61,891 bases of DNA, taken from Aplysia californica. Lineage: Eukaryota. Within the stretch, counting starts at the first letter, position 1, and each line of letters opens with the position of its first letter. This document shows positions 7,601 to 37,800 of the stretch, in pieces. Both the position numbers and the translations under genes were made by a program. The stretch spans positions 67,508 to 129,398 of the forward strand of contig NW_004797723.1 of the NCBI RefSeq assembly GCF_000002075.1. Direction: 5' to 3'. The notes beneath the pieces are model-generated. The model made no database searches, had not been told where the DNA came from, and saw only the letters and a program-made list of their open reading frames with translations.

Positions 7601-9659
7601 TGGCTTTTTTTTACTCTCTTCCAGGATTTTCATTGTGCAGTCTTACCTCACCCCACCTGTCTGTAATTCATTTCACCTGTGGCAGCCCTTCAGATCTCCT
7701 CCCCAACATATTTGTCTCTCATTTGGACCATGTATTAGTATTACTACATTACTACTTAGTAGTCATACAATTCTTTTCTTATCACCTGTTTACTATTATT
7801 TGCTGCTTTGCCTTTCTTCTGTATTCCATAGTATTATTTAAAAGGNNNNNNNNNNNNNNNNNNNNNNNNNNNNNNNNNNNNNNNNNNNNNNNNNNNNNNN
7901 NNNNNNNNNNNNNNNNNNNNNNNNNNNNNNNNNNNNNNNNNNNNNTGGAAATGGTCCGTGAAATTGAAAAAAAACAACCCAACCCAAACGAACAGACGCA
8001 ACTAGTGGGTAAGTGATGTTATGAATAGAACTTATTTGAGCAAGACAATGTGATCAAATGTAAGTTAGTCCAAGAGGTCGAAAGTTCTACAGAAAAAGTA
8101 TCCAAATAGGAAAATTTAGATACAAAGTTGCTCTTAAGAAAACATAAAATTGATGAAAATGGCCAGCATAGAAATGGAAAAATGTATTGAATTCTTCATT
8201 AATAAATCCTCAAGGAACCAATGTAGCCTTAAGCAAAAACTACCCCCAAAAAAAGTTTGAAAGAAATTTAGGCAGCCTAAAAAATTGTTAGATACACATT
8301 GAGAACACAGCTTCAGTTTCAATTGATTATAGTGGTAAGACAGATTTTGGTCACACTGTGTAGTCCACGGCGCCCAAGGCAAACCAAAATACAATAGTTT
8401 CCTAGAGTCTAGTAAGTGTAGTGTAACCAAAGATTCTCTACTGCAGTAGTCTTCGCCTAAGATCCCAGTGCTCAGAAGCAAGGAAAATATGGGATCTTAG
8501 CCGACGAAGCCAAGGAAGAATCTACAGTGACCCATGAACTGACGTGACCCCTGGGTCGATTTATGACATATGGCAAGCAAAGAGTGGTCAACCTTGATGA
8601 CCACAATCACAGTGGCATGAGGCATGCCATAAATAATATATACATGTATATAACACACTCATTAGCCTATCGTGAGTCTTGAGATCTTTATCTACGTTTA
8701 TCCAGTTGCCCCTCCCTTTCACCTGTCCAACAATTTTAGCTTTCCATCTCTGATTGATTCCCCCCCACCCCCAACCTCCTTTGTCGTTACGCACCAGTAC
8801 GTTGTGACCACACCAATTAAAATTCAGGCTGTCTCACAATTTCGGGAATAGAGAAAAACTGCTTTCAATGGTCAGGGAAGAGTTCACAGTTTGATGTGAT
8901 CCCGCCTGGAGCGAACTTGTAGGCCCGACCCACCCAGTGAGTGATGTAAGTTTAGGTGGTGAGGTCAGATGCGAGTGTGATGTTTGGGGAAAAGAAAGGC
9001 ATCGGTCAGTTCATACCTTGGTGTGATCCCGTCTGGAGCAAACACTGTACCGTTTCAAGGAGTTTTACAATGCTTGTGATCACATTCACAATAGTGACTG
9101 ATCTTTGACGCGACGGGCCGTTCTTTGATCTCAACTTTTAACTCTTGGTTGATCGGCTGTGCCCGCCCGGNNNNNNNNNNNNNNNNNNNNNNNNNNNNNN
9201 NNNNNNNNNNNNNNNNNNNNNNNNNNNNNNNNNNNNNNNNNNNNNNNNNNNNNNNNNNNNNNNNNNNNNNTTAGTATTACTACATTACTACTTAGTAGTC
9301 ATACAATTCTTTTCTTATCACCTGTTTACTATTATTTGCTGCTTTGCCTTTCTTCTGTATTCCATAGTATTATTTAAAAGGGATTTTTGTCCTTTCTACT
9401 TGCATAAATTATCATTTTATTCTTCTTTTTATTTCTGTGTCATTCTTCTCCGCAGGAACCTGACCCTCCCTCCCAAAGTTATAAATATGGTGAAGAAGTT
9501 CTGAGAGGCCATGTGGACAAGGACTTGATTTTGTCAGAGCTGGGAAATAACATGTGCTCCACATTTATCTTGGTGTGTGGTACACGCTCGTTTGAGATGG
9601 ACACATTGAAAGCTTTGAAAGAAATAGGGGTTCCAAATGACAATGTTCATAAATTTTGA
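1674..9659 (+). CDS. CYB5RL: NADH-cytochrome b5 reductase-like protein (319 aa)
   Basis: Exons 1674-1886, 2881-3023, 4643-4733, 5290-5394, 7088-7291, 9456-9659; all GT-AG and phase-consistent. N-terminal oxidoreductase-like motif PERPLDSDCCGNGCVPCVFDIY, FAD-binding GQHIIIR and RQYTPIS, GQMS, NADH-binding AGTGVAPM, C-terminal VCGTRSF...HKF*. Confidence 0.93.
3060..3243 (+). mobile_element. Dispersed short retroelement with I/Nimb-type LINE 3' tail (representative copy)
   Basis: Ends in stem-loop GGC(G/A)CTC-ATATGACCTTATGCAGTTGC-GAGCGCC followed by TAAAACCTCTACT(AAAAC)n. Related copies near 5935-6112, 13945-14085, 16300-16470(-), 20700-20750(-), 29590-29785, 29895-30060, 38745-38790(-), 52465-52550, 59840-60470 and 61440-61655. 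Clade assignment is from recalled tail similarity. Confidence 0.7.
4074..4285 (+). mobile_element. tRNA-derived SINE
   Basis: A-box TGGCCTAGTGG and degenerate B-box, then GTTGTGTCTTTGGAGAAACACTTTACATGAATTTCC shared with the copy at 51480-51640(-). Confidence 0.65.
6527..6994. mobile_element. hAT-type MITE
   Basis: TIRs TAGTGGTGGGC / GCCCATCCCTA, perfect 8-bp TSD GTTTGTAC (6519-6526, 6995-7002), subterminal GGTACCGG repeats. Confidence 0.85.
7320..7515 (-). mobile_element. tRNA-derived SINE (same family as 50577-50800)
   Basis: Reverse strand reads GGCATCAGGTGTGATGGTTCAG...GAGTTCGATTCC; the body is similar to the 50577 and 60508 copies. Confidence 0.6.
8444..9170. mobile_element. Partial copy of the non-autonomous TIR element at 31229-33010
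   Basis: Starts CAGTAGTCTTCGCCTAAGATCCC and shows extensive inverted similarity to 31600-31930 and 32630-33010. Confidence 0.75.
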
Positions 9660-20900: not shown

Positions 20901-23900
20901 CCCCGAGGTGTTACACACTCTTTGACAGTAACAAAGACACACCAGTCAGCACATACCAACAGGTGCCAGTTGTTGCGGCATGAACACTCTCTCCTCACAG
21001 AACCGACAGTGCATCAGTTTACAAATCTCGTTGACTGACGATTCTGTAGCGGTGTGACCTCTGGTGACTTTGACACACACAAGAAGGAAGTCCTCCACTG
21101 CCAGCACATACTGAGGTACCAGCGCTTTGTTGTATCTGCCAGCTGATCTGTATGTTGTCAGGAGAAAAATACAACAGTCTGTTAACATTATCTCGATGTA
21201 TTATGCCATTCTTGGAATCTACATGTATTGGAAGGTGGGTGAATTCCACACCCTCATGAACAGCCCCTAAAGCCAACAGAATTTGACATTCAGCTTTAAT
21301 CATTTGTTTCTGTCTGTCTCGTTTTAATTTTCAATTCAGCTTTAATTTCTTGTGTTGTATGTCTATTTCTTTAATTTCATTATGGCATGTGTACTCATGC
21401 GGGTGTGGATTTGCCCTGCAATGTTGAAATTTTAATAAAGGTGAAAAAAAAAATGGAATGAAAATAATGGTGAAAAAAGGGAGTATCAGACCCAAAGTGA
21501 AACCGTGTCCTCTTTTTACATAAAAGTAGCCTTTATAAAACTTGTCTCAAAATCCAACAGCAAAAGTATGGTGTGGAATTCCCCCATCTTACTCAAAACC
21601 TACTCATCCAACCCCCAACTTGACCACACAGATCTGGGTCTAGCAAAGGCAGTACATGCCATTCATGTGGAAACTACTGATGGCCACTGCGGCATAGTGC
21701 ACTCCTTTCACCTATTTTCACCTCTGCTTTGTCATAATCCGCATCCTGGAGAAATGTGACCATCATCAAGCTGAACCACAGTTATGTAAACTGAACCACA
21801 GTTATGTAAATTAAACACAGAAATAAATCTTGTAAAAAAGAAGAAACCAGTCCAAGTCCAAGATGCAACCATTAAGGGAATGGTTAGAACAAGACAAATC
21901 TAACACTACATAGCATGAAACAAAACTATAGGGGGAATGGTTAGGACAAGAAAAATAAATCCAATACTGAAAGACAATAAACAAAATTACAGTATAACAC
22001 GGATAGCTCGAATTCATTGGGACCGGCCTCGGCAGTTCAAGGGATACACAGTTAGAGGGATATCTTACAAAGATAAAGAAGAAGAAGAACAAAAAAGGGG
22101 GGACTGTAGGCACAGTTCGACAGATGCGTGATTTCGAGTCTTCTGTGTTCGACCTATCTATGTTTTACTGTATAAGGGTAGATCAGAACAAAAGAATTCC
22201 AACACTACATGACAAGTCACCCATCTAAGACTAACCTGTCGAAAGGAATCCTCCATTCCCCCCCTCACCCCACCCCTCACAACCAGCCAGCCCAGTAAAT
22301 AATGCAAGATGCCTTTGCCGTGGAGTCAGACTGAAACTAAGATGATGAAATAGATATATAATATATACTGGTAGATCTACAGTCAAACCTGTGTAAGACG
22401 GCCACCCATTGTCAAATAGAAAAGTGGCCGTATAAGACAGGTGGCCGTATAAGACAGGTGGCCGTCTTAGGCAGGACTGATCAAGATGAAGAAAACAAAC
22501 CATTCCCATCTGAGGTCCCAATCGAAAGTAGCCGCGTTGTTGCTGTTTTTGTTGTTGGTGGTGGTGGTGGTTTGTATTTTGTTTGTAATTTTTATTTTGT
22601 TGCTGATTTTGCACAAGGGTGACAATATAACGAAATGTATCAGACGAGGAAGAGCGAGTGCCATGTTAAAACAAACACACGGAGAACGAGCGTCGCTTCT
22701 GTCACAAGTTCATGTTGACGTTCATTGTTACTTTGTTACAGACTGGGTAAACAGTGACCACTCATCTCACGTACGATTTGTGTTTGAGTTCTGGGCGGGG
22801 CTTATGGGTTATGAGGGATAACACGCTTACCTCACCAGCAGCTGAAAATTAGTAGCTATTGGTCAACAGTGGGAGGGGCCTACGCAACAAGATCGGTTGG
22901 AAGGACTACCTAATAACAACGACAGGGGATTGAATTATGACGGCTCACCCACAACGCCAGGGGCCAATGCACAATTTTTGACTAAACGTAATGGAGTCAC
23001 TAAGGTGGTCGTCTAAGACAGGTGTTATTGCTTTGTGTGATAGGGGTTGTGTGTTAAAATCAAGTGTCCGCGGCCCCGTTGGACAGGTGCCCGTTTTACA
23101 CAGTTCAATTATATAGAAAAAACGCAAGGGGGGAAATGGAAGGTGGCCATTTGTACAGATGGCCGTCTTATAGAGGTGGCCGTCAGTGCAGGTTCGACTG
23201 TACTTGAAACTCCAAATACAGTCAAAACTGTCAAAGATGGCCATCCACTCTTGGTGGACGTTTCACACAATGTCATTATAATGTAAAAAATACACAAGAG
23301 AGCAAATGGGAAGTGGCTGTTTGTACAGGTAATTTCTTATACAGGTGGCCGTTAGAGCAGGTTTGACTGCATTTTGATTCCCCAAACCATCTGAAAAGTT
23401 TCAGACAGATGCCTATGCCTCCTACCAACATCCCCATCATCCTTCAAAATGTCAACACAACCTGACTCCATTGTAGTGTTGTAGTGTAATGTACTTACGC
23501 AGCAAGGTCAGCAAGTACAACCCGAGCAGCCATTTCTTTCAAATATTCCGTCTTCATGACGTCCACTGCGTACCAGCGCTTCACAACATGCGGTGAACGG
23601 GCAAACATGGAGGAGTCGGAGACCACAACACACAGCATTCCTCCAGGAGCAATACTATGACAAGCTGACTCCAAGTATGTAACACAGTTTTTCCAAGCAT
23701 TGATGTATCTGGGGGAGTCAGAAACAGAAAATGTGAAAAGCTGAGATTTTTCATCTGAATTATTTCAATGCTGTAAGACTTCAATTTCAGCAGATCGTAT
23801 TACCTCAGTTGACAGTTCCACAACTCTTGGTTGAAAAAGGTTGGCAAAACAGTAAAGCCGCAATTGCTGCCAAATGATTTACTGTAAAGGTATAACATTC

Positions 23901-26900
23901 CTCAAATATTCTTTCTACTATTATATTTTGCATATACCCTATTACATCATTACTGCATACTGTTTCACATTCAAAAAATCTATAACTGTTCACTCATACT
24001 GTGGGTTAAAAAGATAACTACAATTGGGGGAGAGACTGTTCTTTAAGTGGTGAAATGCCAAACACCTATCAACACAAGTTCAAACAAAGACAAAAACTGC
24101 AGACCAAACTGAATATAACTCGTTCAGCATAGGAAACCTCAAAAATTATTATTCTCTGCACAGAAAAGATTTAACTCACATGTACTGAAAAGTCTCCATC
24201 ATCATGACAGCTTTCGCATCTGCTTGACACACATGGACCTCACTTGTCCCTTGCTTATCGGTGGGGTCACCAGGAACTCTGCACCCATCAAGACAAAATT
24301 TTCTGGTGGTGAGCGAGTTTTCTTCAGCATTGGCAGTCAGCAGTGATACATCAGAGTGATCAGAGAGGGTCACACGGACTTCATCTCCAAGTTTTTTCTT
24401 CCACTGTAAACCAGTCACCCCTTCATGTGATGAAACAATCTTTTTTTAAAGTTTACATACACATGAAATCTTTCCCAATTAGGAAAGTTATTCTGAAGAC
24501 AAAACAGAATCTACTAAAATCTAAAGTTACTCTTTATCCCGAACAAATGCAAAAGTTCTGAGCAGCTTTTTTTACTATAAAAATAACCGTTAATGCTGAA
24601 AATTAGCTTCCAAATTAACAGTTAACATCTATATTATAGTCTGAGAGACTTGATGAAAAGAAAGAAGTATGGATTAGTTTGGAACAATAATTCAATGAAA
24701 CATCAATTGCAGATCCTCACCAGTGTTTGCAAGAGCATCAAGAGCTGAAACTAGAGAATCACATTTTTGCGTAGTTGAGTCTCCTTCAGCATTCTCAGTT
24801 TGCTGTTTGCGCTGGCTTTGTGCAGTCTTTGTCTTCAGCAGGGCTGACAGTGTGGCAAGAGAAAACTCTCTGTGATTTAAACATGTGAAAGCAAATTCTG
24901 TTAATGGCATTAACTTTCAAAGAAGGTAGATGGTCATGAGAGATAAAGTGTCACAAGTCACCCGATGCAATTTACAGCCACCTGTCCAAGAAAATCACTT
25001 GTACAAATGACCACTTCCCACCCCTTTGCTTTCTGTTCTCCCAAAAGTCCGAGAGCAAATATGTGTTTTTGTATGTGTGTGGAATACAGTGTTGCTATGA
25101 TATGGGGTACTCTGGGATGACTTTGCCGAGGAAATAGGGTCTGAATGCGGCCATGTAATTGGTGATTGGTAAGAGGATTTCTGGAAGTGAAAATTGTTTG
25201 ACTGGTTTGAGATGTGATATTGCAGTGTGAACAAGGTTAAAATAAATCTTTCATTGAGACGATTGAATATTGCTTCCACTCTACTTGCTTCTTCAATTAT
25301 TGCAGTGTCACGGGTGTATTTTCTTGTTTCTGTAAAAACTGTGTTTGTTAATTCCTTGTATACCTGGGGATGGAGGTACTAGTGACAGTGATTGCCCACG
25401 AATGATCTGCTGTGGTATGCTTTGGGTGGGATGCGACGTTTGAATTACACTTTGCTTTAAAACCCTCATCCTGCGGGAGCCGGATTTATGTCGCCCGATA
25501 AGCCTATTTCAGCACCTCGCCTACGTTCTAGTCCCAAATCAGTGTAGCTCCTGGCTCAGCGCACGTGCAGCACGCATCCTCTTGGGTCCCAAGTCGGATC
25601 CCCATTCACGCAGGTCAAGTGTTTGTGCGTCAGTCTACTTGAGTTTGTGTGCGTTATTGGCCTTCTTCTAGAACCGCCTGCGTTGGTTCGTAATCGAGGA
25701 ATACGTCTCATTCAAAACATGCCAAGTTGGCAGCTCTAGATGTTCGTCCAATGAAATTATAGAAGAAATTGACCCACTTAGACATGAGGAGCTCGAAAGG
25801 ATAGTCAGGAAACAAGACTTCCATATAAATGTTCGCGGAATACGACTGTTCATCTTCGTCCTTCACATCAATCCCATAAATCAAGAGAGTATCTCCTGCC
25901 ATATATATATATATATAGATCTAGATATACAGAAAAGAGTTTGGTAAGATTGTACTTTACCGGACCACCGGTCGGAATTACTTTCGCTATGGCGCCCTTG
26001 GTGCCTAGTGGCCCGCTATTCTTCGTTTCCGAGCTCCCCTACTCAGTTTTCTACGTCCTCACCCTTCGACTGCCAACAATCGACTGGCGTCTCTTACCGG
26101 GTTTTTCAGTCATCACGACCGTGCCACAGTGCCGTGCCCTTTGACCCACGACCCTGACACCTTGAGGCTAATTGGTCAATCTAATCATGTGGTCCACTAT
26201 TCTTATTAATTTGCTCGCGACTCTGCTGGCTTGGCCTACTCCTGGTCCGGCAAAGTACAATGGAGGGCTAGAGATGCGCACGAGAGCTCATTTGCATAAT
26301 TGCAACCCCCCTCAGTCTCAGCCCTGCTCGCCACTTGGCGAATATCTACCCCGATGGTCCGCTCATGTTATTGTTTTTATTATGTGTGTGTGTCTTTGAA
26401 TTATTGTTGCCAGGGGGGCTAGCCCCCTGAAACCCCCCCTCCCCCCACTGTTGTTACATTGATATGTAAACACGACTGTCCGCTCATGTTATTGTTTCGC
26501 ATTTGTGTGTTATCTTTAATATTTCCAGAGTTTTTCAGAAACGTTTTCCTCTTACTCTCTCACCTCACATGTTACTAATATAACCGGTTTTATCAGTTTC
26601 GAGTGAAAGACAAGACAGAGCGGAAAGTAGATCTTGGTTACGACAACGAAAGTGGCTATTCTCACCCGCCCGGAAGTTCACGCAAGATCAACTCCTCCCC
26701 TCTTCTCTCTCTCTGTCTCTTTCTGAATACTGTCTATCGGTGTGGACGATCAAATTGACCAAAACAAAGTTAAAAAGTGATGTTAAATTTTAAAACACAA
26801 AAGTAAATTAATTTGGTTGTCTACAAAGATGCTACAGCTATTTAACTTTTCGAATCGAGCCGAACTACGCGGGTCGCCATTTTGTTTTGCCCAGAAATTC

Positions 26901-31228: not shown

Positions 31229-33010
31229 AAGTAGTCGTTTCCACCTAAGATCCCACCGCTTACGAAACAAAAATGACTGTCACGTCGCCGGCTATGGAAG
31301 ACTTGCCCAGCCGGTGAAGCCGGAGGGTGGCCCACGGACGAGTTCAAGTAGTCGGAAATTTCGGCAGGAGCCGGAAAACTTTCACCCCTGGATCCCAGTT
31401 CGCTTACGTTCCCAGCTCGCTTAAGATCCCGCTGTTTTAAGAAAACTTAATTTTTACTATACAAAAGTCACCCCTAAGATCCCGCTCTGATTCACTCTAA
31501 ACTCTAAGATCCCGCATTTCACATCACAATTTGCGGAACAAAAACGCGTGTGGGCACAGCCAATCAACCAAGAGTGAAAGGTTGAGATCAATAAACTGTC
31601 CGTCACGTCAAAGATCAGCCACTATCGCGAATGCGATCACATACACATTGTAAAACTAGATGAAGCGATATAATGTTTGCCCCAGACGGGATCACACTGG
31701 GATGTGAACTGACCGACACTTTTGTTTTCCCCGTGCATCACACTCACACCTGAGCTCTCCCCCTAAACTTACATCACTCGCTGGGTGGGTAGGGCCTACA
31801 CGTTCGCCCCAGGCCGGATCACATCGAATCGTGAACTCTTCAGTTGTCTCTACTCCCGAATTAGCGAGACAGACTGAATTTTCATTGGTGTGTTCACAAT
31901 GTAATGGTGTGTAACGGCAAAGGTGGTTGNNNNNNNNNNNNNNNNNNNNNNNNNNNNNNNNNNNNNNNNNNNNNNNNNNNNNNNNNNNNNNNNNNNNNNN
32001 NNNNNNNNNNNNNNNNNNNNNNNNNNNNNGAGAGAGAGAGAGAGAGAAAGAGAGTCTACGAATAATATAATAATGTTACCCCCCCTTCTTAATGTGGATT
32101 GAATGAGATTATAACAGTGGGGCGGTCGCCTGTGGTTTTACCGTTGTGAGACTTTCAGAATGTCCAGTGGCCCGAGTAATAGAAACCACACACGTATCAC
32201 AAAGGGAGCTGTACTTTCGCAGATTCTGAAGAGAAAAGCGGATATTTTCACGTTTGACCTACCAACATATCTTTGAAAAGAGTTGAAAAGCCAGTGCGTT
32301 GTACCACAAGGAAAGGGGAAATGCTCAGATTGATTGAAAGTAAATGAAAGGGGTCGTGTCCTGTTTAGCATGTTTACAAGAGGTCAAATCATTTACGGTT
32401 TTTGGGAACGGGGAGAAGAAGGAGACAGAAGATTAATGTGGCTTTCTTTCTGAGGAGTCTGTGTCACTTTCCTTCGCTTGTTGACATCTGATTCAAGACG
32501 CCTGCGATTGTGTGGAGTGTAGTGGCACTTGACGCTGATAGAATACCGCACTCGTATAATGTTATGATGAAGGACGATCTGTAACAACGTTCTGACTGTA
32601 AACAGCGTGTATGTAGGTCATGGGTTCTTGGTTGTTTGGGGGGGGGAGATCTCGGTCAGAGATGGAAAGCTATACATTTTCGACAGGTAAAGGGGAGGAG
32701 CAACTGGATAAGCGTTGATCTTGAGACTCATGGATAGGATCATAAGTGAAAATGGCACGCCTCATGCCACAATGCACTGTGATAGGTCATCAAGGTTAAC
32801 CACTCCTTGCTGGCCATATGCCATAAACCCACCAAGGGGTCACATCAGTTCATTTTAGTTTTTGAGTGGAGGGAGACCATTTTACCGATTGTGAGCCTTA
32901 ACATGGGTCACCATAGATTCTTCCCTGGGTTCGTCGGTTAAGATCCCGGTTCGCCCAAGATCCTGCATTTCCTTGTTCCTGAGCACCGGGATCTTAGGCG
33001 GAGACTACTG
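31229..33010. mobile_element. About 1.8 kb non-autonomous Tc1/mariner-like TIR element
   Basis: Ends AGTAGTCGTTTCCACCTAAGATCCC / GGGATCTTAGGCGGAGACTACTG with repeated TAAGATCCC subterminal motifs; no transposase ORF. Confidence 0.7.
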
Positions 33011-34093
33011 CACAACAAAGATTATTAAGTCACTTCAGAAACCATCAAATCAACTTGCAAAAGCCTAAAACGAGAACAAGTCAGATCAAACTCCGAGATC
33101 CAGTTTAACTGTTATATTTGATTTTGCAAGATCATGCCACAGACAAATCTATGTCAAATGTACCGGGAAGCAAAAATAATTTATTCCAAAAAAACTTTTG
33201 GGGAAATGTTTCTCTTACTCTTACAACAGTAGAACAAATCTGCACCTCCAGCGCGTTTGGTTCAAAGACATGTTCAGCTTTAACTTAAACAGTCACCACA
33301 ATGTTACCTCATGTCAAAGTATCGAGGTACTTGTCAGAAAAAAACTATATCAGTCAACTATCCGATTCGTTTACCAAATCATCACACAGAAACCTACTCA
33401 AAAGGAAATCCTGGAACAGTTGCACTTGCTTTTGCCTACATTGTAAAAGTTTCTAAGGCAATTCTGACATAATCTTAAACAGGTAGTACATGCCTCCAAA
33501 ATAACCATTATTGTGTTGAAATAGGGGCATAAATAAGACTCAATTCAGGTTGAATACAGAAAGCATTGGTATGGGTGCCGCTACTCACAAAGTGAACTTG
33601 GCTGCCACTGAATTGATCAAAACAACAACCATGAACAAAATTAAAAAAGAAGGAGAAATTGTAGTTGTGAACAATTTATTATTAAAAGCAACAACAGAAT
33701 CCTCAATCAAGAGGACTTCGTCACAAGAAGTCACATTCAAAGTTAAAAAAAATAAAATCAAGCACCAAATTAGGACGTGTCAGGTTTACAACTTTACTTT
33801 TAATAAACAAAATAAAACATGCAAGTACCTCCCTCACTCTTGGGTGCCTCCCACTTAAAATATATCTGTCTGCAAGAAATGATGATGAAAACCTGTGAGT
33901 CCGATTTCTTAAAAGTAAAAGGGTACCATGCTAAAAAAAAACATGTTTTCAATAAATCTAAAAGAGAGGTAGGCCTACTACTATTTGTCCAGGGAGAAAT
34001 TTTCCTTTAGATGAGCAGTAAACCCTGAATTCACACAACCTAATTTGGCACTTTACAATGAAACACATTCACTCCCTTCCTAATTGACACACC

Positions 34094-34610
34094 ATCTGCT
34101 TCTCGTGAACATACATAGAAAATGTATTTACAACAATTGATTTTTTCCCCCAGTTTTGTGCCATTAAAATGGTAACAAAATGACACTGAATGTTTCAACA
34201 GAAAAAATTTTGGTGACTGTATCTGTTCTTACAGCCAAACCAAAAAAATCGCTTCTTTTCCGTGGACCAAAAGTGTAGTATCGGGCCCTAAACCAGAACA
34301 TGACTAAAGACCAAATGTGCAGTACCCTCATTCTTGTGTGTAGTATCCGAGCTTATGAAAAGCATTATTCAAAATGCTAGGCAAAATTTATGCCTTACAG
34401 TGTAGCATCTGAACCTTCGAATGAAGTACCTGAACTTATCAGCACAAATAAACAAACTGATACATGGCCTCAATAGCAAAGTTGAGAGGTCTCGCATTAG
34501 AGCCGATTACTGCAGTCCCACACTGAAAAACAAAATAAGATTGTCTGTGACTTAAGTGTAAAATCAGAACGACAGTGCGTCGCTTATGTCTACAGTCTTG
34601 AATACTTACC
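34094..34610 (-). promoter_or_regulatory. Putative SNRPA1 3'-UTR element: U1 snRNA-complementary site plus array of U2 snRNA-complementary sites
   Basis: The + strand matches U2 snRNA, so the mRNA is antisense to it. Matches: GTATCTGTTCTTA 34219-34231, ATCGCTTCT 34248-34256, AAGTGTAGTATC 34271-34282, GTGTAGTATC 34338-34347, AGTGTAGcATCTG 34399-34411, AGTAcCTGaaCTTATCAG 34425-34442, GCTTCTCG 34098-34105. ATACTTACC (U1 nt 1-9) is at 34602-34610. The function is inferred. Confidence 0.7.
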
Positions 34611-34841
34611 AAGTCAAAGTCAGACTGTTCGATAAATTGTATAAAATGAAACCATGAAGATATTGCATTAATCTTAACCATGAACTTAAAAGCCATCAGA
34701 TTCAGTGAGAGCACTATTAATTGAAATGGGAAAACCAAAATCACTTTAAAAAACAATCATTTGTTCTCAAGACACGAATGAAATTTTTTACGTTTCATTT
34801 CTAAGAGATGACACTTTTTTTTTTACTCATTACAAAAATTA

Positions 34842-37800
34842 CTAGTCCTCTTCCATATCATCATTGTCATCATTGTCATCATCATCATCATTATCTTCTT
34901 CCTGATAACCAGATGCCTGATTGCCTTCATCTTCATCTTCGTCCCCTCCTTCTGGCTCCATTTCTTCTTCCTCTTCGGCCTGATTTCCTTCTTCTTCTTC
35001 TTCTTCTTCCTCCTCCTCCTCTTCTTCCTCTGCACTCTCTTTTGGCTCTGAAAAGACAAACAGCAAAGAGAAAACAATACATAAAACATGTTTCTCCTTT
35101 GAAGAAAAGTGGAATTGACACATCTCCCTATCACAACCGCTTGCAAAGACAAATTCTGCAGCGCACAATACACAGAGGAAGACATTAATGGTCATTTAGT
35201 GCAGGAAAAGAGTAAGACAAGACAGCAGACAGACAGAAACAAAAGATGGAACAAAACAAATAGGAATGCAGGAAGGGAGAAGCAAAGACAAGCAAAGAAG
35301 AGGTGGGAGGACAACATACCAGAGGGGGCAGGCCTGTATTTCAAATATATGGCCTTAAACTCCTTTTCATTTAAAAGTTAACATAACAAGACCTTTAAAA
35401 TCTGGAATGTCAGACAAACGTAATCATATAAAATATTTCAAACGCTGTGACTTTAAAAAAAACCCAAAACCAAGAGAATATCTGCTTTGAGTTGAGCTTA
35501 ATCAAGCCAGCACAATGAAAAAACCATTCTTGTTATGCTCTTACTAACGCTCTGCCAATTTGCATACATACTAAATCCTCAGTGATAGACAAAGTTAGGC
35601 AGAAANNNNNNNNNNNNNNNNNNNNNNNNNNNNNNNNNNNNNNNNNNNNNNNNNNNNNNNNNNNNNNNNNNNNNNNNNNNNNNNNNNNNNNNNNNNNNNN
35701 NNNNNACAACAACAACAACAAACAAACCTTGCCATGGGTGAAAAATACTACTTTCATAAGAGACGAATACAGTTCATTGTGTGTCATACAGTCATGTACT
35801 TACTTGACCCTCAGAGTCCTTGCAGATACCATAAGATCACCTACCGGTAATCCCAAGTCTTACAGAAGAGAATTGTGTTGCTTATGTTGCTCCCCGCATG
35901 AGAAACACCTCGTTTCAAATGCATTGAGAGTGGGCTCAAAATAAGCAGAAGTTTAGTGACACAAAACTCACCCACAGATACACAAACACACGCACATACA
36001 ACCAAACAAATAGAACTGGTTGGGTGATCACAGCACAAATATATTTCAGTATTTGGTTTTTCTCTTTGTTAACAATCCGTATGAAGATAAAAACAAAACA
36101 AAGCTGCCATTCCAGAGGGCAGTGAAGGAAGTTGTTTTCTCATAAAAGCCTAATGTGACTCAAGAGATAATGAGATTATTTCTCCTTTCGATAGTCTTAT
36201 CACAGGTGCACAGAATAAGTTTTATATTTTGCTTTGTACTTGTATACGCTCTTCCTTTTGTTTGTTCACTTTTAAGAAATGAAAAGTTGTGTAAATAGTA
36301 GCTCTATCATTGCCAGGGTCCAATGCCACAAAAGTACACATTCCAATTCAAATGAAACCTAGTGGGTAGGCCAACAATCATTATTCATGTTTGTATTAGG
36401 AAATAATTTGATCACAGAGGAGTCAACTACCATTACATAAAACAGAATTGCACGAGAAAAAGAAAGACAATCCATGAAAATGCTGGATAAAATTGAATCC
36501 AATGAAAAAGCGTCTGAAGTAAGTCACAAATATTAGACAATTGATTTTTAGGACCTGTCTTTTGAAGGACAAGAACTGCACACAACACTAAATACTGACA
36601 GACACAATTGATTTTGCTAATTTAGTAGTTCCCTGGCAAGTAGACTAATGCATACAAAACTAATCTTAATTCTTATTTCACTCTTAGAATTATTCATGTT
36701 GCCAACACAGAAATGCGGTTAACCTTTATAATGAAAATAAATGTAATAATAACACATTACCTGAACATAGTAAAGACAATGTGAAAGACGTACATCATCA
36801 ATTTTTTTAAAGTCGTGTACTGTATGCCAGAGTGTCCAATATTTGAAACACATGAACATATATGTGAATCTCATCTACAATTTCATACCATACCCAAAAA
36901 TCAATATACCACAAGTAAAGCAAACATCTAATAATAATTAAATAATAATAATAATAATAAAATAAAATAAAATGATACATTTTTCTCCTCAACCTACATA
37001 TATGCCAGTAAAACTTATAAGACCATTCAGTTTTGTTAAAAAGCATCATCAATGATACACTTAGTATGTATTCCTCACCTTTTGCCCCCGTTGATTTACT
37101 TGGAGCATCACCCTGCCCTGGAATCTGTCCTGACTGCAGCATTTGATGAATTTTCTCATACTCCTCCAAAGATTTTGCACCCAAAATAGCTTTCTGTAAC
37201 AACAACATTGCAAAAACGGTTTAGAAAAAGCATTTATTTTTCCATTCTCGAACAAAAGGCACAAATAAACACTTTCACAGAAGAACACCACAGTCTTTAC
37301 CACCTACGCAATTCTACTACGGAAAAACAAAGTATTCATTTCCTTGTACAGCGAAAACAAGATGAACAAAATTTTTGAAAATTGAGAATTTCAGCAAGAG
37401 CAGAAGAGCCCATATCTCTCAGTCGGCTCTCAAAATTGAATTTGTCCCCACACACTCCAGTGCGCGAAGAGGAAGCTCATCCATGCTTAATATATTCTGT
37501 TCACCTTTGGTCATACTGGAAACTGACTACTTTTGCGAAAATATGATTAAGAAAAATACCTTTTTAAAATTTTAAAAACAAAAAAGATGGTGCAGACGTT
37601 AGCTGTCTAAGATCCTTTTAAAAGTCTTTTTCTCATTCTTACATTTATGTCACAACCAGAACCAGACTTGTTCATCAACAATGGCTATATATTTATATAC
37701 ACATATGAGAATTACCCTGATTGCAGCTGCTTCCTGCTTCGTTGGACCAGTGGTTGCAACTCGTTGTGTCTGTAGATTTTCTCCTGGAGTGAAAGTTTTG

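What the first reader, a model, noticed from the sequence alone, without database searches (positions are those of the whole stretch)
34271..34411. The anti-U2 sites are 'branchless' super-branch-points
Seen: on the mRNA the three best copies read GAUACUACACUU, GAUACUACAC and CAGAUGCUACACU. Established: a true branch site (UACUAAC) pairs with U2 GUAGUA while bulging one adenosine. These copies pair contiguously for 10-13 nt with no extra A, and none has an obvious strong polypyrimidine tract plus AG right after it. Inference: they are high-affinity, catalytically non-productive U2 docking or decoy sites rather than real branch points. They could act as an enhancer, a retention signal or a sponge.
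Basis: partly seen in the sequence, partly recalled or inferred. Interest (0 to 1): 0.8.

Follow-up and report, generated by a model that had tools for sequence, protein, structure and literature searches.

The report
Conserved anti-U2 array in U2A' mRNA
The three words are the best-kept cores of a string of sequences complementary to U2 snRNA in the 3' untranslated region of the mRNA for the U2 snRNP protein U2A'; the string recurs in the same gene of many other invertebrates, so it looks like a selected docking site for U2 and not a set of branch points.

Summary
Observation confirmed. GTGTAGTATC (34273, 34338) and GTGTAGCATC (34400) lie on the + strand. The gene is on the minus strand, so its mRNA carries their complement, which pairs with U2 snRNA with no bulged A.

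The gene is U2A'/SNRPA1. RNA data place the region inside an unspliced, polyadenylated 3' UTR of about 1.18 kb (stop 34845-34843, poly(A) site about 33660).

The three words are part of 7-8 U2-antisense segments (34219-34565). Together they complement U2 nt 1-10 and 22-75, and perhaps the stem-loop IV loop. U2-derived DNA is rare in this genome.

Orthologous U2A' 3' UTRs or 3' flanks carry comparable antisense-U2 clusters on the gene strand. This holds for five other heterobranchs, Haliotis, Lingula and several arthropod-like or unidentified metatranscriptome contigs. Each of eleven loci beat all 200 shuffles. Pomacea, Crassostrea (first 1.5 kb) and one fish-like transcript had none.

Across 16 UTRs, AUACUACAC-like words occur 39 times against 2.4 expected, and canonical UACUAAC never occurs.

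Most likely these are selected, non-catalytic U2 docking modules that tie U2A' expression to U2 availability. U2 binding, the regulatory output and its sign are inferred. A neutral pseudogene relic is nearly excluded, a sponge is unlikely and real branch points are unlikely. I found no published description.

The parts
34843..34845 (-). Stop codon (TAG) of the U2A'/SNRPA1 coding sequence. The last coding exon encodes the acidic tail ending ...MEED.
   Evidence: ORF 34842-35195 minus; exon mapping by tblastn; LRR_9 family on the orthologues.
33660..34842 (-). 3' UTR of about 1.18 kb, present as one unspliced piece in the dominant RNA.
   Evidence: X1 contig record 8 spans 33661-34860 without a joint. 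Poly(T) loose ends lie at 33659-33662 in two poly(A)+ RNA-seq runs, with reads on the minus-strand side only.
34602..34609 (-). GTAAGTAT, a consensus 5' splice site (U1 site) 233 nt after the stop and upstream of most of the array.
   Evidence: The same GGTAAGTAT lies at +183 in Physella and +181 in Lingula.
34523..34541 (-). Polypyrimidine tract plus CAG, a 3' splice-site-like signal. With the site above it delimits a putative 87-nt 3'-UTR intron (34609-34523).
   Evidence: The last 27 residues of the predicted protein P0324 map from 34522. Similar Py-CAG signals stand before the arrays of Physella, Elysia, Haliotis, Lingula and L011. No spliced reads were seen.
34554..34565 (-). Copy h: GAUUUUACACUU, a weak anti-U2 word inside the putative small intron.
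   Evidence: The predicted duplex with U2 is no better than shuffles (-15.3 kcal/mol).
34508..34519 (-). Element g: GGGACUGCAGUA, complementary to the U2 stem-loop IV loop region (U2 nt about 159-170).
   Evidence: score 19; duplex -30.2 against shuffle mean -19.0. Similar words stand in the same position in Physella, Haliotis and Elysia. Statistically weak.
34422..34471 (-). Element f: antisense of U2 nt about 32-75 (branch-point-recognition sequence through stem IIa).
   Evidence: duplex -52.5 kcal/mol against shuffle mean -22.8 and minimum -37. A homologous first element occurs in L009, L010 and L011.
34399..34411 (-).
34338..34356 (-). Element d: ...GAUACUACAC, antisense of U2 nt about 31-49.
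34307..34324 (-). Element c: a degenerate antisense of U2 nt about 22-38. It shares with b the derived GACCAAA where U2 has GATCAAA.
   Evidence: (D4).
34249..34282 (-). Element b: GAUACUACACUUUUGGUC, a linker, then GAAGCGAU. It is antisense to U2 nt 1-8 and about 23-41, with the stem I part replaced.
   Evidence: The same 'BPRS complement + linker + GAAGCGAU' module occurs in L009, L011, L012 and L024; L013 carries a comparable element ending GAGAGCGAT.
34219..34235 (-). Element a: GCUGUAAGAACAGAUAC, antisense of U2 nt about 36-53.
   Evidence: score 29. The same core, GAUAAGAACAGAU, is the conserved unit in Lingula and Haliotis.
33675..33680 (-). AAUAAA poly(A) signal. Cleavage is at about 33660.

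Best explanation
The three words are the best-preserved cores of an evolutionarily conserved array of antisense-U2 modules in the 3' UTR of the U2A' (SNRPA1) mRNA.

Each module can pair, without a bulged adenosine, with the single-stranded 5' part of U2 snRNA. The targets are the branch-point-recognition sequence and its 3' flank up to stem IIa (nt about 26-68) and, in some modules, the 5' terminal nt 1-10.

Because no adenosine is bulged and no strong 3' splice site follows, the pairing is not productive for splicing. The modules stay in the mature message.

Most likely they dock U2 snRNA or U2 snRNP on the message that encodes a U2-specific protein. The fate of that message would then depend on how much pairing-competent U2 is present, giving homeostatic feedback on U2A' supply. 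The step affected could be nuclear release, 3'-end processing at the poly(A) signal that lies just downstream of the array in several of the species, or use of the small 3'-UTR intron just upstream, whose splicing would expose the mRNA to NMD.

Shown: sequence, strand, presence in mRNA, rarity of U2-like DNA in the genome, enrichment and conservation.
Inferred: physical U2 binding, the regulatory output and its sign.
For: (1) The words and a further 4-5 segments are U2-derived and concentrated here. One tile holds 7 matches, its overlapping neighbour 4, and no other tile more than 3.

(2) The region lies in the unspliced, polyadenylated U2A' 3' UTR.

(3) U2-like DNA is rare in this 927-Mb genome. 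There are 45 covariance-model hits, 20 matches to a 24-mer at up to 3 mismatches, and the 12-mer occurs 117 times against 96 for its control. With roughly 100 U2-like loci in the genome, a chance landing in this particular 1.2-kb UTR is of the order of 1e-4.

(4) Orthologous U2A' 3' UTRs or flanks carry antisense-U2 clusters on the gene strand: L009/L010, L011, L012, L013, Elysia, Physella, Haliotis and Lingula. Each beats all 200 dinucleotide shuffles, and sense-orientation scores sit at background.

(5) In 80 further U2A'-encoding metagenome contigs (201 kb), hits of score 27 or more to U2 nt 1-100 are 11 antisense against 0 sense. All 11 lie 3' of the coding match. Several of these contigs are arthropod-like.

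(6) All 16 positive loci cover U2 nt 33-39. Coverage peaks at nt 37-43 and extends over 26-68, with a second block at nt 1-10.

(7) Pooled word counts: AUACUACAC-like 39 against 2.4 expected, GAAGCGAU-like 18 against 4.8, AAGAACAGA-like 21 against 2.5, canonical UACUAAC 0.

(8) Predicted duplexes with U2 nt 1-80 range from -23 to -52 kcal/mol. For f, b, c, a, e and d they lie beyond every shuffle. A consensus branch site gives -4.9.

(9) Units within a species resemble each other more than units between species, yet all stay complementary to the invariant U2. This is the pattern expected for turnover under selection for pairing.
Against: No experiment or read-level datum shows U2 bound to this mRNA.

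The 5' region of U2 is partly sequestered in the mature 17S particle (established knowledge), so which form of U2 would pair is unknown.

The array is absent, or was not found, in Pomacea, in the first 1.5 kb after the stop in Crassostrea, and in a fish-like transcript. It is therefore not universal.

In this window the array ends 540 nt before the poly(A) signal, further than in several other species.

The sign of any regulation is open. The only hint of constraint within the species is that few differences fall in 33940-34860 while many fall in 33660-33940, in two or three haplotypes. That is weak.
Confidence: 0.6

Rival explanations
1. Assembly scaffold or sensor of immature U2. The array, together with the word complementary to the stem-loop IV loop, pairs with naked or incompletely assembled U2 snRNA, whose 5' end and stem-loop IV loop are not yet covered by proteins. 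This would bring the RNA partner to the site where U2A' is made, or raise U2A' output when unassembled U2 accumulates. The coupling is positive rather than repressive.
For: The complementarity includes U2 segments that are protein-covered or structured in the mature particle: nt 1-10, the stem IIa strand, in L011 the Sm-site region, and possibly the stem-loop IV loop that U2A'/U2B'' bind. The array sits in the mature, exported-type polyadenylated mRNA.
Against: The stem-loop IV word is short and statistically weak (shuffle minimum -31.8 against observed -30.2). There is no evidence on where the pairing would take place. To my knowledge no precedent exists for mRNA-templated snRNP assembly.
Confidence: 0.15
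2. They are real, if unusual, branch sites of alternative 3'-UTR introns, and their use gives NMD-sensitive isoforms.
For: A consensus 5' splice site (34609-34602) and a Py-tract-CAG (34541-34523) lie just upstream, and similar signals recur in Physella and Lingula. A predicted protein (P0324) uses the acceptor at 34523/34522. Short U-runs and AGs follow copies b, d and e.
Against: Perfect pairing leaves no bulged adenosine to act as nucleophile. The three best copies lie downstream of the only strong acceptor, not upstream of one. The RNA contig is unspliced across the whole region and no joint was reported. Arrays are retained in transcript contigs of four other species. Complementarity to U2 nt 1-10 and 40-68 has no role in branch-site recognition. 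No UACUAAC occurs in any of 16 UTRs.
Confidence: 0.1
3. Neutral relic. An antisense U2 retro-pseudogene landed in the UTR and was locally duplicated. It has no function.
For: The segments are colinear with one antisense U2 copy (g, then f, then the repeated 26-50 units, then b). Shared derived changes show local duplication. The Rfam U2 model gives a weak full-length match (14.9 bits).
Against: Neutral 3'-UTR sequence would not keep complementarity to U2 across heterobranchs, a vetigastropod, a brachiopod and arthropod-like taxa. U2-derived DNA is rare in the genome.
Confidence: 0.05
4. Sponge or decoy that lowers the amount of free U2 snRNP in the cell.
For: There are many high-affinity sites per molecule.
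Against: Stoichiometry (established knowledge, not measured here): U2 snRNA is present in hundreds of thousands of copies per cell, while an ordinary mRNA has tens to hundreds. Depth at this locus is ordinary.
Confidence: 0.03
5. The functional strand is the other one: a U2-like RNA gene or DNA element opposite the UTR.
For: The + strand reads as sense U2 fragments.
Against: There is no Sm site in order, no stem-loops III/IV and several partial copies. No + strand reads lie over the array. In other species the arrays are in contigs that also carry the U2A' coding sequence on the same strand.
Confidence: 0.03

Closest known systems
U1A autoregulation through the polyadenylation inhibition element (PIE) in the U1A 3' UTR
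   Same: An snRNP-specific protein gene carries, in its own 3' UTR, an element related in sequence to its cognate snRNA. The presumed purpose is homeostasis of an snRNP component.
   Different: The PIE is a sense mimic of the U1 stem-loop II loop and is bound by the U1A protein. Here the elements are antisense to U2, so the predicted partner is the snRNA itself. No protein binding or poly(A) polymerase inhibition has been tested.
U1 snRNA pairing to 5'-splice-site-like sequences in terminal exons (papillomavirus late 3' UTR, U1 interference, telescripting)
   Same: Non-splicing base pairing between the 5' end of a spliceosomal snRNA and an mRNA 3' UTR upstream of the poly(A) signal. In those systems perfect, extended complementarity is what makes the site non-productive and repressive.
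   Different: A different snRNA (U2), multiple copies, located in the gene of a U2 protein. The effect on 3'-end formation is unknown. A consensus U1 site also lies upstream of the array here (34609-34602).
Canonical branch point sequence (UACUAAC / yUnAy)
   Same: It pairs with the same GUAGUA of U2.
   Different: No bulged adenosine, 10-13 or more contiguous pairs, complementarity running on into U2 nt 40-68 and 1-10, no strong acceptor behind the best copies, and retention in mature mRNA.
U2 snRNA pseudogenes and snRNA-derived repeats (for example SINEU elements with snRNA-derived heads)
   Same: The sequence derives from U2, and its segments are colinear with one antisense copy.
   Different: It is not a dispersed repeat (unique in the genome). 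The internal 26-50 segment is amplified. It is conserved at one orthologous position across phyla.
Unproductive splicing (NMD-coupled) autoregulation of splicing factors, for example SR proteins and SmB/B'
   Same: A splicing-factor gene has conserved non-coding sequence and a putative intron downstream of its stop codon.
   Different: The conserved sequence is an snRNA complement, not a poison exon or a protein-binding enhancer. The spliced isoform was not observed here.
U2 snRNP binding to a 22-nt element of intronless histone mRNAs that stimulates 3'-end processing
   Same: U2 snRNP engages a non-intronic mRNA element and influences 3'-end formation.
   Different: As I recall the literature (not checked here), that contact is made through SF3b proteins and not through extended pairing with the U2 5' region. 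It is also not in a U2 protein gene.

Membership tests
Canonical U2-type branch point | Sequence of UACUAAC / yUnAy type that leaves one adenosine unpaired opposite U2 GUAGUA | tested here: not met
   The copies pair contiguously. There is no TACTAAC in 16 orthologous UTRs, against 39 ATACTACAC-like words.
Canonical U2-type branch point | Lies about 18-40 nt upstream of a polypyrimidine tract and AG acceptor | tested here: not met
   Only short U-runs follow copies b, d and e. The one strong Py-tract-CAG (34541-34523) follows weak copy h and lies upstream of the three best copies.
Canonical U2-type branch point | Removed from the mature RNA as part of a lariat | tested here: inconclusive
   The transcript contig is unspliced over 33661-34860 and no joints were reported. 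Arrays are retained in four other species' transcript contigs. Contigs drop rare isoforms, and lariats cannot be tested with these tools.
U2 snRNA gene or pseudogene (Rfam RF00004) | Covariance-model score at or above the gathering threshold (46 bits) | tested here: not met
   14.9 bits, E = 3.2, for 34248-34389 (+). There was no hit at gathering thresholds.
U2 snRNA gene or pseudogene (Rfam RF00004) | Sequence derived from U2 | tested here: met
   Seven local matches in one tile, an outlier among 396 tiles. The segments are colinear with one antisense copy, with internal amplification.
U2 snRNA gene or pseudogene (Rfam RF00004) | Single colinear copy with Sm site and stem-loops III/IV | tested here: not met
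   Only nt 1-75 are represented, several times over, plus a 12-nt stem-loop IV word.
PIE-type autoregulatory 3'-UTR element (U1A) | Located in the 3' UTR of the mRNA of an snRNP-specific protein | tested here: met
   U2A' exons, stop codon and poly(A) site.
PIE-type autoregulatory 3'-UTR element (U1A) | Sense mimic of the snRNA loop that the encoded protein binds | tested here: not met
   All elements are antisense to U2. Sense-orientation scores are at background.
PIE-type autoregulatory 3'-UTR element (U1A) | Bound by the encoded protein, with inhibition of poly(A) polymerase | not testable with these tools
   Needs binding and polyadenylation assays.
snRNA:3'-UTR pairing sites that control 3'-end formation (U1 type) | Extended contiguous complementarity to the single-stranded 5' region of a spliceosomal snRNA, in the terminal exon upstream of the poly(A) signal | tested here: met
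   The array lies 540 nt upstream of AAUAAA here, and within roughly 10-110 nt of a poly(A) signal or contig end in L009, L011, L012, Physella, Lingula, Elysia, Haliotis and L028.
snRNA:3'-UTR pairing sites that control 3'-end formation (U1 type) | Measured effect on cleavage, polyadenylation or mRNA level | not testable with these tools
   Needs reporters.
NMD-coupled 3'-UTR intron of splicing-factor genes | Donor and acceptor more than 50 nt downstream of the stop codon | tested here: met
   GTAAGTAT at 34609-34602 (+233) and CAG at 34525-34523. The same donor word occurs in Physella and Lingula.
NMD-coupled 3'-UTR intron of splicing-factor genes | Spliced isoform observed | tested here: not met
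   No joint in four runs. Raw-read coverage of this part was under 1x, so rare isoforms are not excluded.

The most novel reading that the evidence does not exclude
The mRNA of the U2-specific protein U2A' carries an ancient natural antisense to the 5' domain of U2 snRNA. It is shared at least by molluscs, a brachiopod and arthropod-like taxa. Through it the cell would read the amount or assembly state of U2 directly by RNA-RNA pairing and adjust U2A' synthesis. That would be an snRNA-sensing feedback loop, or an mRNA-templated assembly device, of a kind not described for any snRNP.
Probability: 0.5. Interest if true: 0.9.

Novelty: new variant of a known kind. Interest (0 to 1): 0.82.

Why it matters
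How cells match the supply of snRNP-specific proteins to their snRNAs is known in detail only for U1A. For U2 no such circuit is known.

A conserved, multi-copy complement to U2's branch-point-recognition region, in the message for a U2 protein, is a concrete cis-element that can be mutated to test for one. It would also be a natural example of perfect, bulge-less pairing that holds U2 without allowing catalysis. That bears on how branch-site geometry commits U2 to splicing, and on the design of U2-directed decoys.

Conservation from molluscs to a brachiopod and to arthropod-like sequences means it can be tested in laboratory invertebrates.

Tried and rejected
- Rfam at gathering thresholds found nothing in the window. 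At permissive thresholds it gave only a 14.9-bit U2 match and chance snoRNA-like hits in the GAT-repeat coding region.
- Dispersed repeat or SINE was rejected. The 351-nt region is unique in the genome and U2-like DNA is rare.
- Neutral pseudogene relic was my first reading. I rejected it after the cross-species comparison.
- A genome-wide pattern of two ATACTACAC words 30-60 nt apart returned only unrelated satellites, 64 hits against 173 for the control, and was uninformative.
- The fold of the UTR segment alone is only mildly more stable than shuffles (z = -2.2). I drew no conclusion from it.
- To find close orthologues I searched one exon alone by reference (window:40520-40642:-), then whole proteins returned by the tools.
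- The TARA fragment P0001 gave only a 758-nt contig.
- The look-up for a vertebrate (Latimeria) found nothing on record, so vertebrates remain untested.
- The N run at about 35606-35725 was left untouched and kept out of the read-laying stretch.
- Literature searches found no description of this element. The library lacks most subscription journals, so absence is not proof.
Full report
**1. The observation.**
On the + strand the window reads AAGTGTAGTATC at 34271-34282, GTGTAGTATC at 34338-34347 and AGTGTAGCATCTG at 34399-34411. Start-to-start spacing is 65 and 62 nt.

The genome's own U2 snRNA gene (L002) reads ...GATCAAAGTGTAGTATCTGTTCTTATCAG... The + strand words are therefore sense U2, and the minus strand carries their complement. 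The three sites give 12-13, 10 and 13 contiguous pairs with U2. The third includes one G-U. None has an extra adenosine.

As a bare count the 10-mer is not enriched in the window: 3 matches against 2.6 expected. I then slid this genome's U2 over the whole window in 550-nt tiles on both strands. The tile at 34101 (+) held 7 local matches of score 19 or more (sum 162). Its overlapping neighbour at 33826 held 4. No other of the 396 tiles held more than 3 (sum 66).

**2. What surrounds it.**
The minus strand carries the exons of U2A' (SNRPA1), shown by ORFs and tblastn of orthologues. The last coding exon ends with TAG at 34845-34843.

Two poly(A)+ RNA-seq runs show poly(A) tails starting at 33659-33662, just after AAUAAA at 33680-33675. 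A transcript contig from another run covers 33661-34860 in one piece without any joint. The region of the finding therefore lies in a 3' UTR of about 1.18 kb that the dominant mRNA keeps unspliced.

That is memory, not a test. The nearest named proteins are heterobranch gastropods.

**3. The three words are part of something larger.**
Local alignment to U2 finds these segments on the mRNA strand, listed 5' to 3':
- h, 34565-34554: weak.
- g, 34519-34508: complement of the stem-loop IV loop, U2 nt about 159-170.
- f, 34471-34422: U2 nt 32-75.
- e, 34411-34399: U2 nt 30-42.
- d, 34356-34338: U2 nt 31-49.
- c, 34324-34307: U2 nt 22-38.
- b, 34282-34249: U2 nt about 23-41, a short linker, then GAAGCGAU, the complement of U2 nt 1-8.
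- a, 34235-34219: U2 nt 36-53.

The order g, f, repeated units, b is colinear with one antisense U2 copy in which the nt 26-50 part has been multiplied. Shared derived changes show local duplication. Segments b and c both have GACCAAA where U2 has GATCAAA. Segments d, e, f and h have CCGAGC, CTGAAC or CAGAAC where U2 has CTGTTC.

Predicted duplex energies with U2 nt 1-80 are -52.5 (f), -39.0 (b), -30.8 (c), -29.0 (a), -27.2 (e) and -23.0 (d) kcal/mol. Each lies beyond every one of 300 shuffles. Copy h (-15.3) is no better than shuffles. A consensus branch site gives -4.9.

The absence of a bulged A is therefore not a separate design feature. It is what any reverse complement of U2 has. The complementarity also reaches well beyond the GUAGUA box.

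**4. Is it a chance pseudogene?**
My first reading was a decayed antisense U2 pseudogene. Two results speak against a neutral relic.

First, U2-like DNA is rare in this genome. There are 45 covariance-model hits, most in gene arrays. There are 20 matches to a 24-mer at up to 3 mismatches. The 12-mer occurs 117 times against 96 for its reversed control. The 351-nt region itself is unique. With roughly 100 U2-like loci in the genome, a chance landing in the 1.2-kb UTR of the one gene for a U2-specific protein is of the order of 1e-4.

Second, and decisively, the feature recurs in orthologues. I searched one exon alone by reference, then whole proteins returned by the tools. This gave orthologous U2A' loci.

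On the gene strand, downstream of the stop, antisense-U2 clusters are present in:
- two unnamed heterobranch transcripts (L009/L010 and L011, proteins about 74% identical to the window's exons), with 9-11 elements each;
- L012 and L013;
- the genomes of Elysia crispata, Physella acuta, Haliotis rubra and the brachiopod Lingula anatina.

In a shuffle test the summed antisense score beat all 200 dinucleotide shuffles in eleven loci: Aplysia, L009, L011, L012, L013, Elysia, Physella, Haliotis, Lingula, L024 and L047. The sense-orientation score stayed at background. Pomacea, Crassostrea (first 1.5 kb) and a fish-like transcript with a short UTR had none.

A scan of metagenome and metatranscriptome contigs gave 80 more U2A'-encoding loci totalling 201 kb. 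Hits of score 27 or more to U2 nt 1-100 were 11 in antisense and 0 in sense. All 11 lay 3' of the coding match. Some of these contigs are arthropod-like by best protein match (L028, L039, L044, L075). Others are unidentified metazoans (L024, L027, L047).

L011 shows a tandem array of about 30-nt units, each complementary to U2 nt 26-50. L024 shows about six modules, each combining complements of U2 nt 40-68, nt 26-41 and nt 1-10.

**5. What in U2 is targeted.**
Over 16 positive loci, every locus covers U2 nt 33-39. Coverage peaks at nt 37-43 and extends over 26-68. A second block covers nt 1-10 in 4-6 loci.

Pooled word counts in the 16 UTRs:

| Word | Observed | Shuffle mean |
|---|---|---|
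| AUACUACAC, up to 1 mismatch | 39 | 2.4 |
| AAGAACAGA, up to 1 mismatch | 21 | 2.5 |
| GAAGCGAU, up to 1 mismatch | 18 | 4.8 |
| UACUAAC, exact | 0 | 1.6 |

The same words reverse-complemented, that is in sense-U2 orientation, gave 2, 7, 2 and 1.

The conserved target is the branch-point-recognition sequence together with its 3' flank up to the 5' strand of stem IIa and, in some modules, the very 5' end of U2. The flank and the 5' end play no part in branch-site recognition.

**6. Branch points or docking sites?**
Against real branch points:
- No adenosine is bulged.
- The three best copies lie downstream of the only strong acceptor-like signal in the region (Py-tract-CAG, 34541-34523), not upstream of one.
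- The RNA is unspliced here, and the arrays are retained in transcript contigs of four other species.
- The complementarity includes parts of U2 irrelevant to branch recognition.

For some link with splicing: a consensus donor, GTAAGTAT, lies at 34609-34602, 233 nt after the stop. The same GGTAAGTAT stands at +183 in Physella and +181 in Lingula. In each case a Py-tract-CAG follows 86-180 nt later, and then the array. Elysia, Haliotis and L011 also have a Py-tract-CAG just before the array.

A predicted protein of this gene (P0324) ends in 27 residues read from 34522 onward, so it uses that acceptor. Its donor, however, falls in the GAA repeat and is not GT. I treat that model with caution.

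A small 3'-UTR intron more than 50 nt after the stop would make the spliced form an NMD target. I saw no spliced read, but raw-read depth there was below 1x.

**7. Mechanism.**
Shown: the elements exist, are transcribed in the U2A' mRNA, are antisense to U2, are strongly enriched, and are conserved at the orthologous position across distant invertebrates.

Inferred: they pair with U2 snRNA. The most economical reading is that they dock U2 snRNA or snRNP on the message for a U2-specific protein. The message's fate would then depend on pairing-competent U2, giving feedback on U2A' supply.

Possible outputs:
- Nuclear retention of a message decorated with non-productive U2.
- Modulation of cleavage and polyadenylation. 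In L009, L011, L012, Physella, Lingula, Elysia, Haliotis and L028 the array ends roughly 10-110 nt before a poly(A) signal or the contig end. Here the distance is 540 nt.
- Control of the small upstream intron, and hence of NMD.

The sign is unknown. A variant reading is that the partner is immature U2, whose 5' end, Sm site and stem-loop IV loop are still free. This would fit the g word and the Sm-region complement in L011, and would make the array an assembly scaffold or a sensor of unassembled U2.

A sponge is unlikely on stoichiometry. That rests on established knowledge and was not measured here.

**8. Comparison with known systems.**
It works most like the 5'-splice-site-like U1 sites in terminal exons that regulate 3'-end formation. 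In purpose it resembles the U1A PIE. It fails the PIE membership test because it is antisense and not a sense mimic. It fails the branch-point test and the U2 gene or pseudogene test (14.9 bits against the 46-bit threshold).

No Rfam family matches. Seven full-text searches and one paper look-up found no description of U2 complementarity in a U2A' or SNRPA1 UTR. The library is incomplete, so this is not proof of novelty.

**9. Limits.**
- There is no direct evidence of U2 binding or of any regulatory effect.
- The taxa of the metatranscriptome contigs are inferred only from best protein matches.
- Homology of the arrays between phyla, as opposed to repeated gain, is likely for Aplysia, Physella and Lingula, which share the layout donor, acceptor, array. 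It is not proven.
- Vertebrates and other U2 protein genes were not tested.
- The N run at about 35606-35725 was left alone and kept out of the stretch given to the reads tool.

**10. Verdict.**
It is sharpened to this: conserved antisense-U2 modules in the U2A' 3' UTR, probably a U2-sensing regulatory device.

Noticed in passing
window 34523-34609 (minus strand): Putative 87-nt intron inside the 3' UTR: donor TTG|GTAAGTAT, and acceptor with a long pyrimidine tract plus CAG. The same GGTAAGTAT lies at a similar distance after the stop in Physella (L016, about 9118) and Lingula (L020, about 8171). It is unspliced in the dominant RNA contig. If spliced it would place a junction more than 50 nt after the stop, which is NMD-prone.
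   Followed up: partly
window 34442-34525 and about 35010 (minus strand); protein P0324: A predicted protein of this gene in public collections replaces most of the acidic tail by 27 residues read from the 3' UTR (CGTAVIG...VYLC). It uses the acceptor at 34523/34522 but a non-GT donor inside the GAA repeat. This looks like a doubtful gene model, or a rare isoform.
   Followed up: partly
window 34508-34519 (minus strand); L016 about 9325-9345; L018 22980-22995; L015 about 25481-25497: A short word complementary to the loop of U2 stem-loop IV, which is the U2A'/U2B'' binding site, stands as the first element after the acceptor-like signal in Aplysia, Physella, Haliotis and Elysia. Statistically weak, but its position is conserved.
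   Followed up: partly
window 33660-33940 versus 33940-34860: Differences between the assembly and RNA/DNA contigs of other samples cluster in the last 280 nt of the UTR: about 10 substitutions and 8 indels. The 920 nt that hold the array show 0-3 substitutions and no indel.
   Followed up: no
window 32859-33010: A stretch of about 150 nt just beyond the poly(A) site has very high word depth in all runs and + strand RNA reads with many variants. It is probably a high-copy repeat or mobile-element fragment.
   Followed up: no
L016 10421-14081 and window about 23660-24200: A TRM1-family methyltransferase gene lies next to U2A' in both Physella and this window. Gene order is conserved across heterobranchs.
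   Followed up: no
L019 17191-17256 (Crassostrea): A single strong antisense-U2 stretch (U2 nt 7-65, score 49) lies 4.1 kb downstream of the oyster U2A' stop. Nothing is found in the first 1.5 kb. It could be a long UTR or an unrelated pseudogene.
   Followed up: no
G000 contig C516 519-551 kb and C396 129-133 kb: Intact U2 genes (178.8 bits) sit in tandem arrays, with a period of about 3.08 kb on C516 and about 3.9 kb on C396.
   Followed up: no
window 34806-34872 (minus strand): Weak C/D-box snoRNA-like Rfam hits (SNORD11B, snoR66; E 3.7-6). They fall on the GAT/GAA-repeat end of the coding sequence and look like chance matches to UGAUGA.
   Followed up: partly
window about 35606-35725: A run of N inside the intron before the last coding exon.
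   Followed up: no
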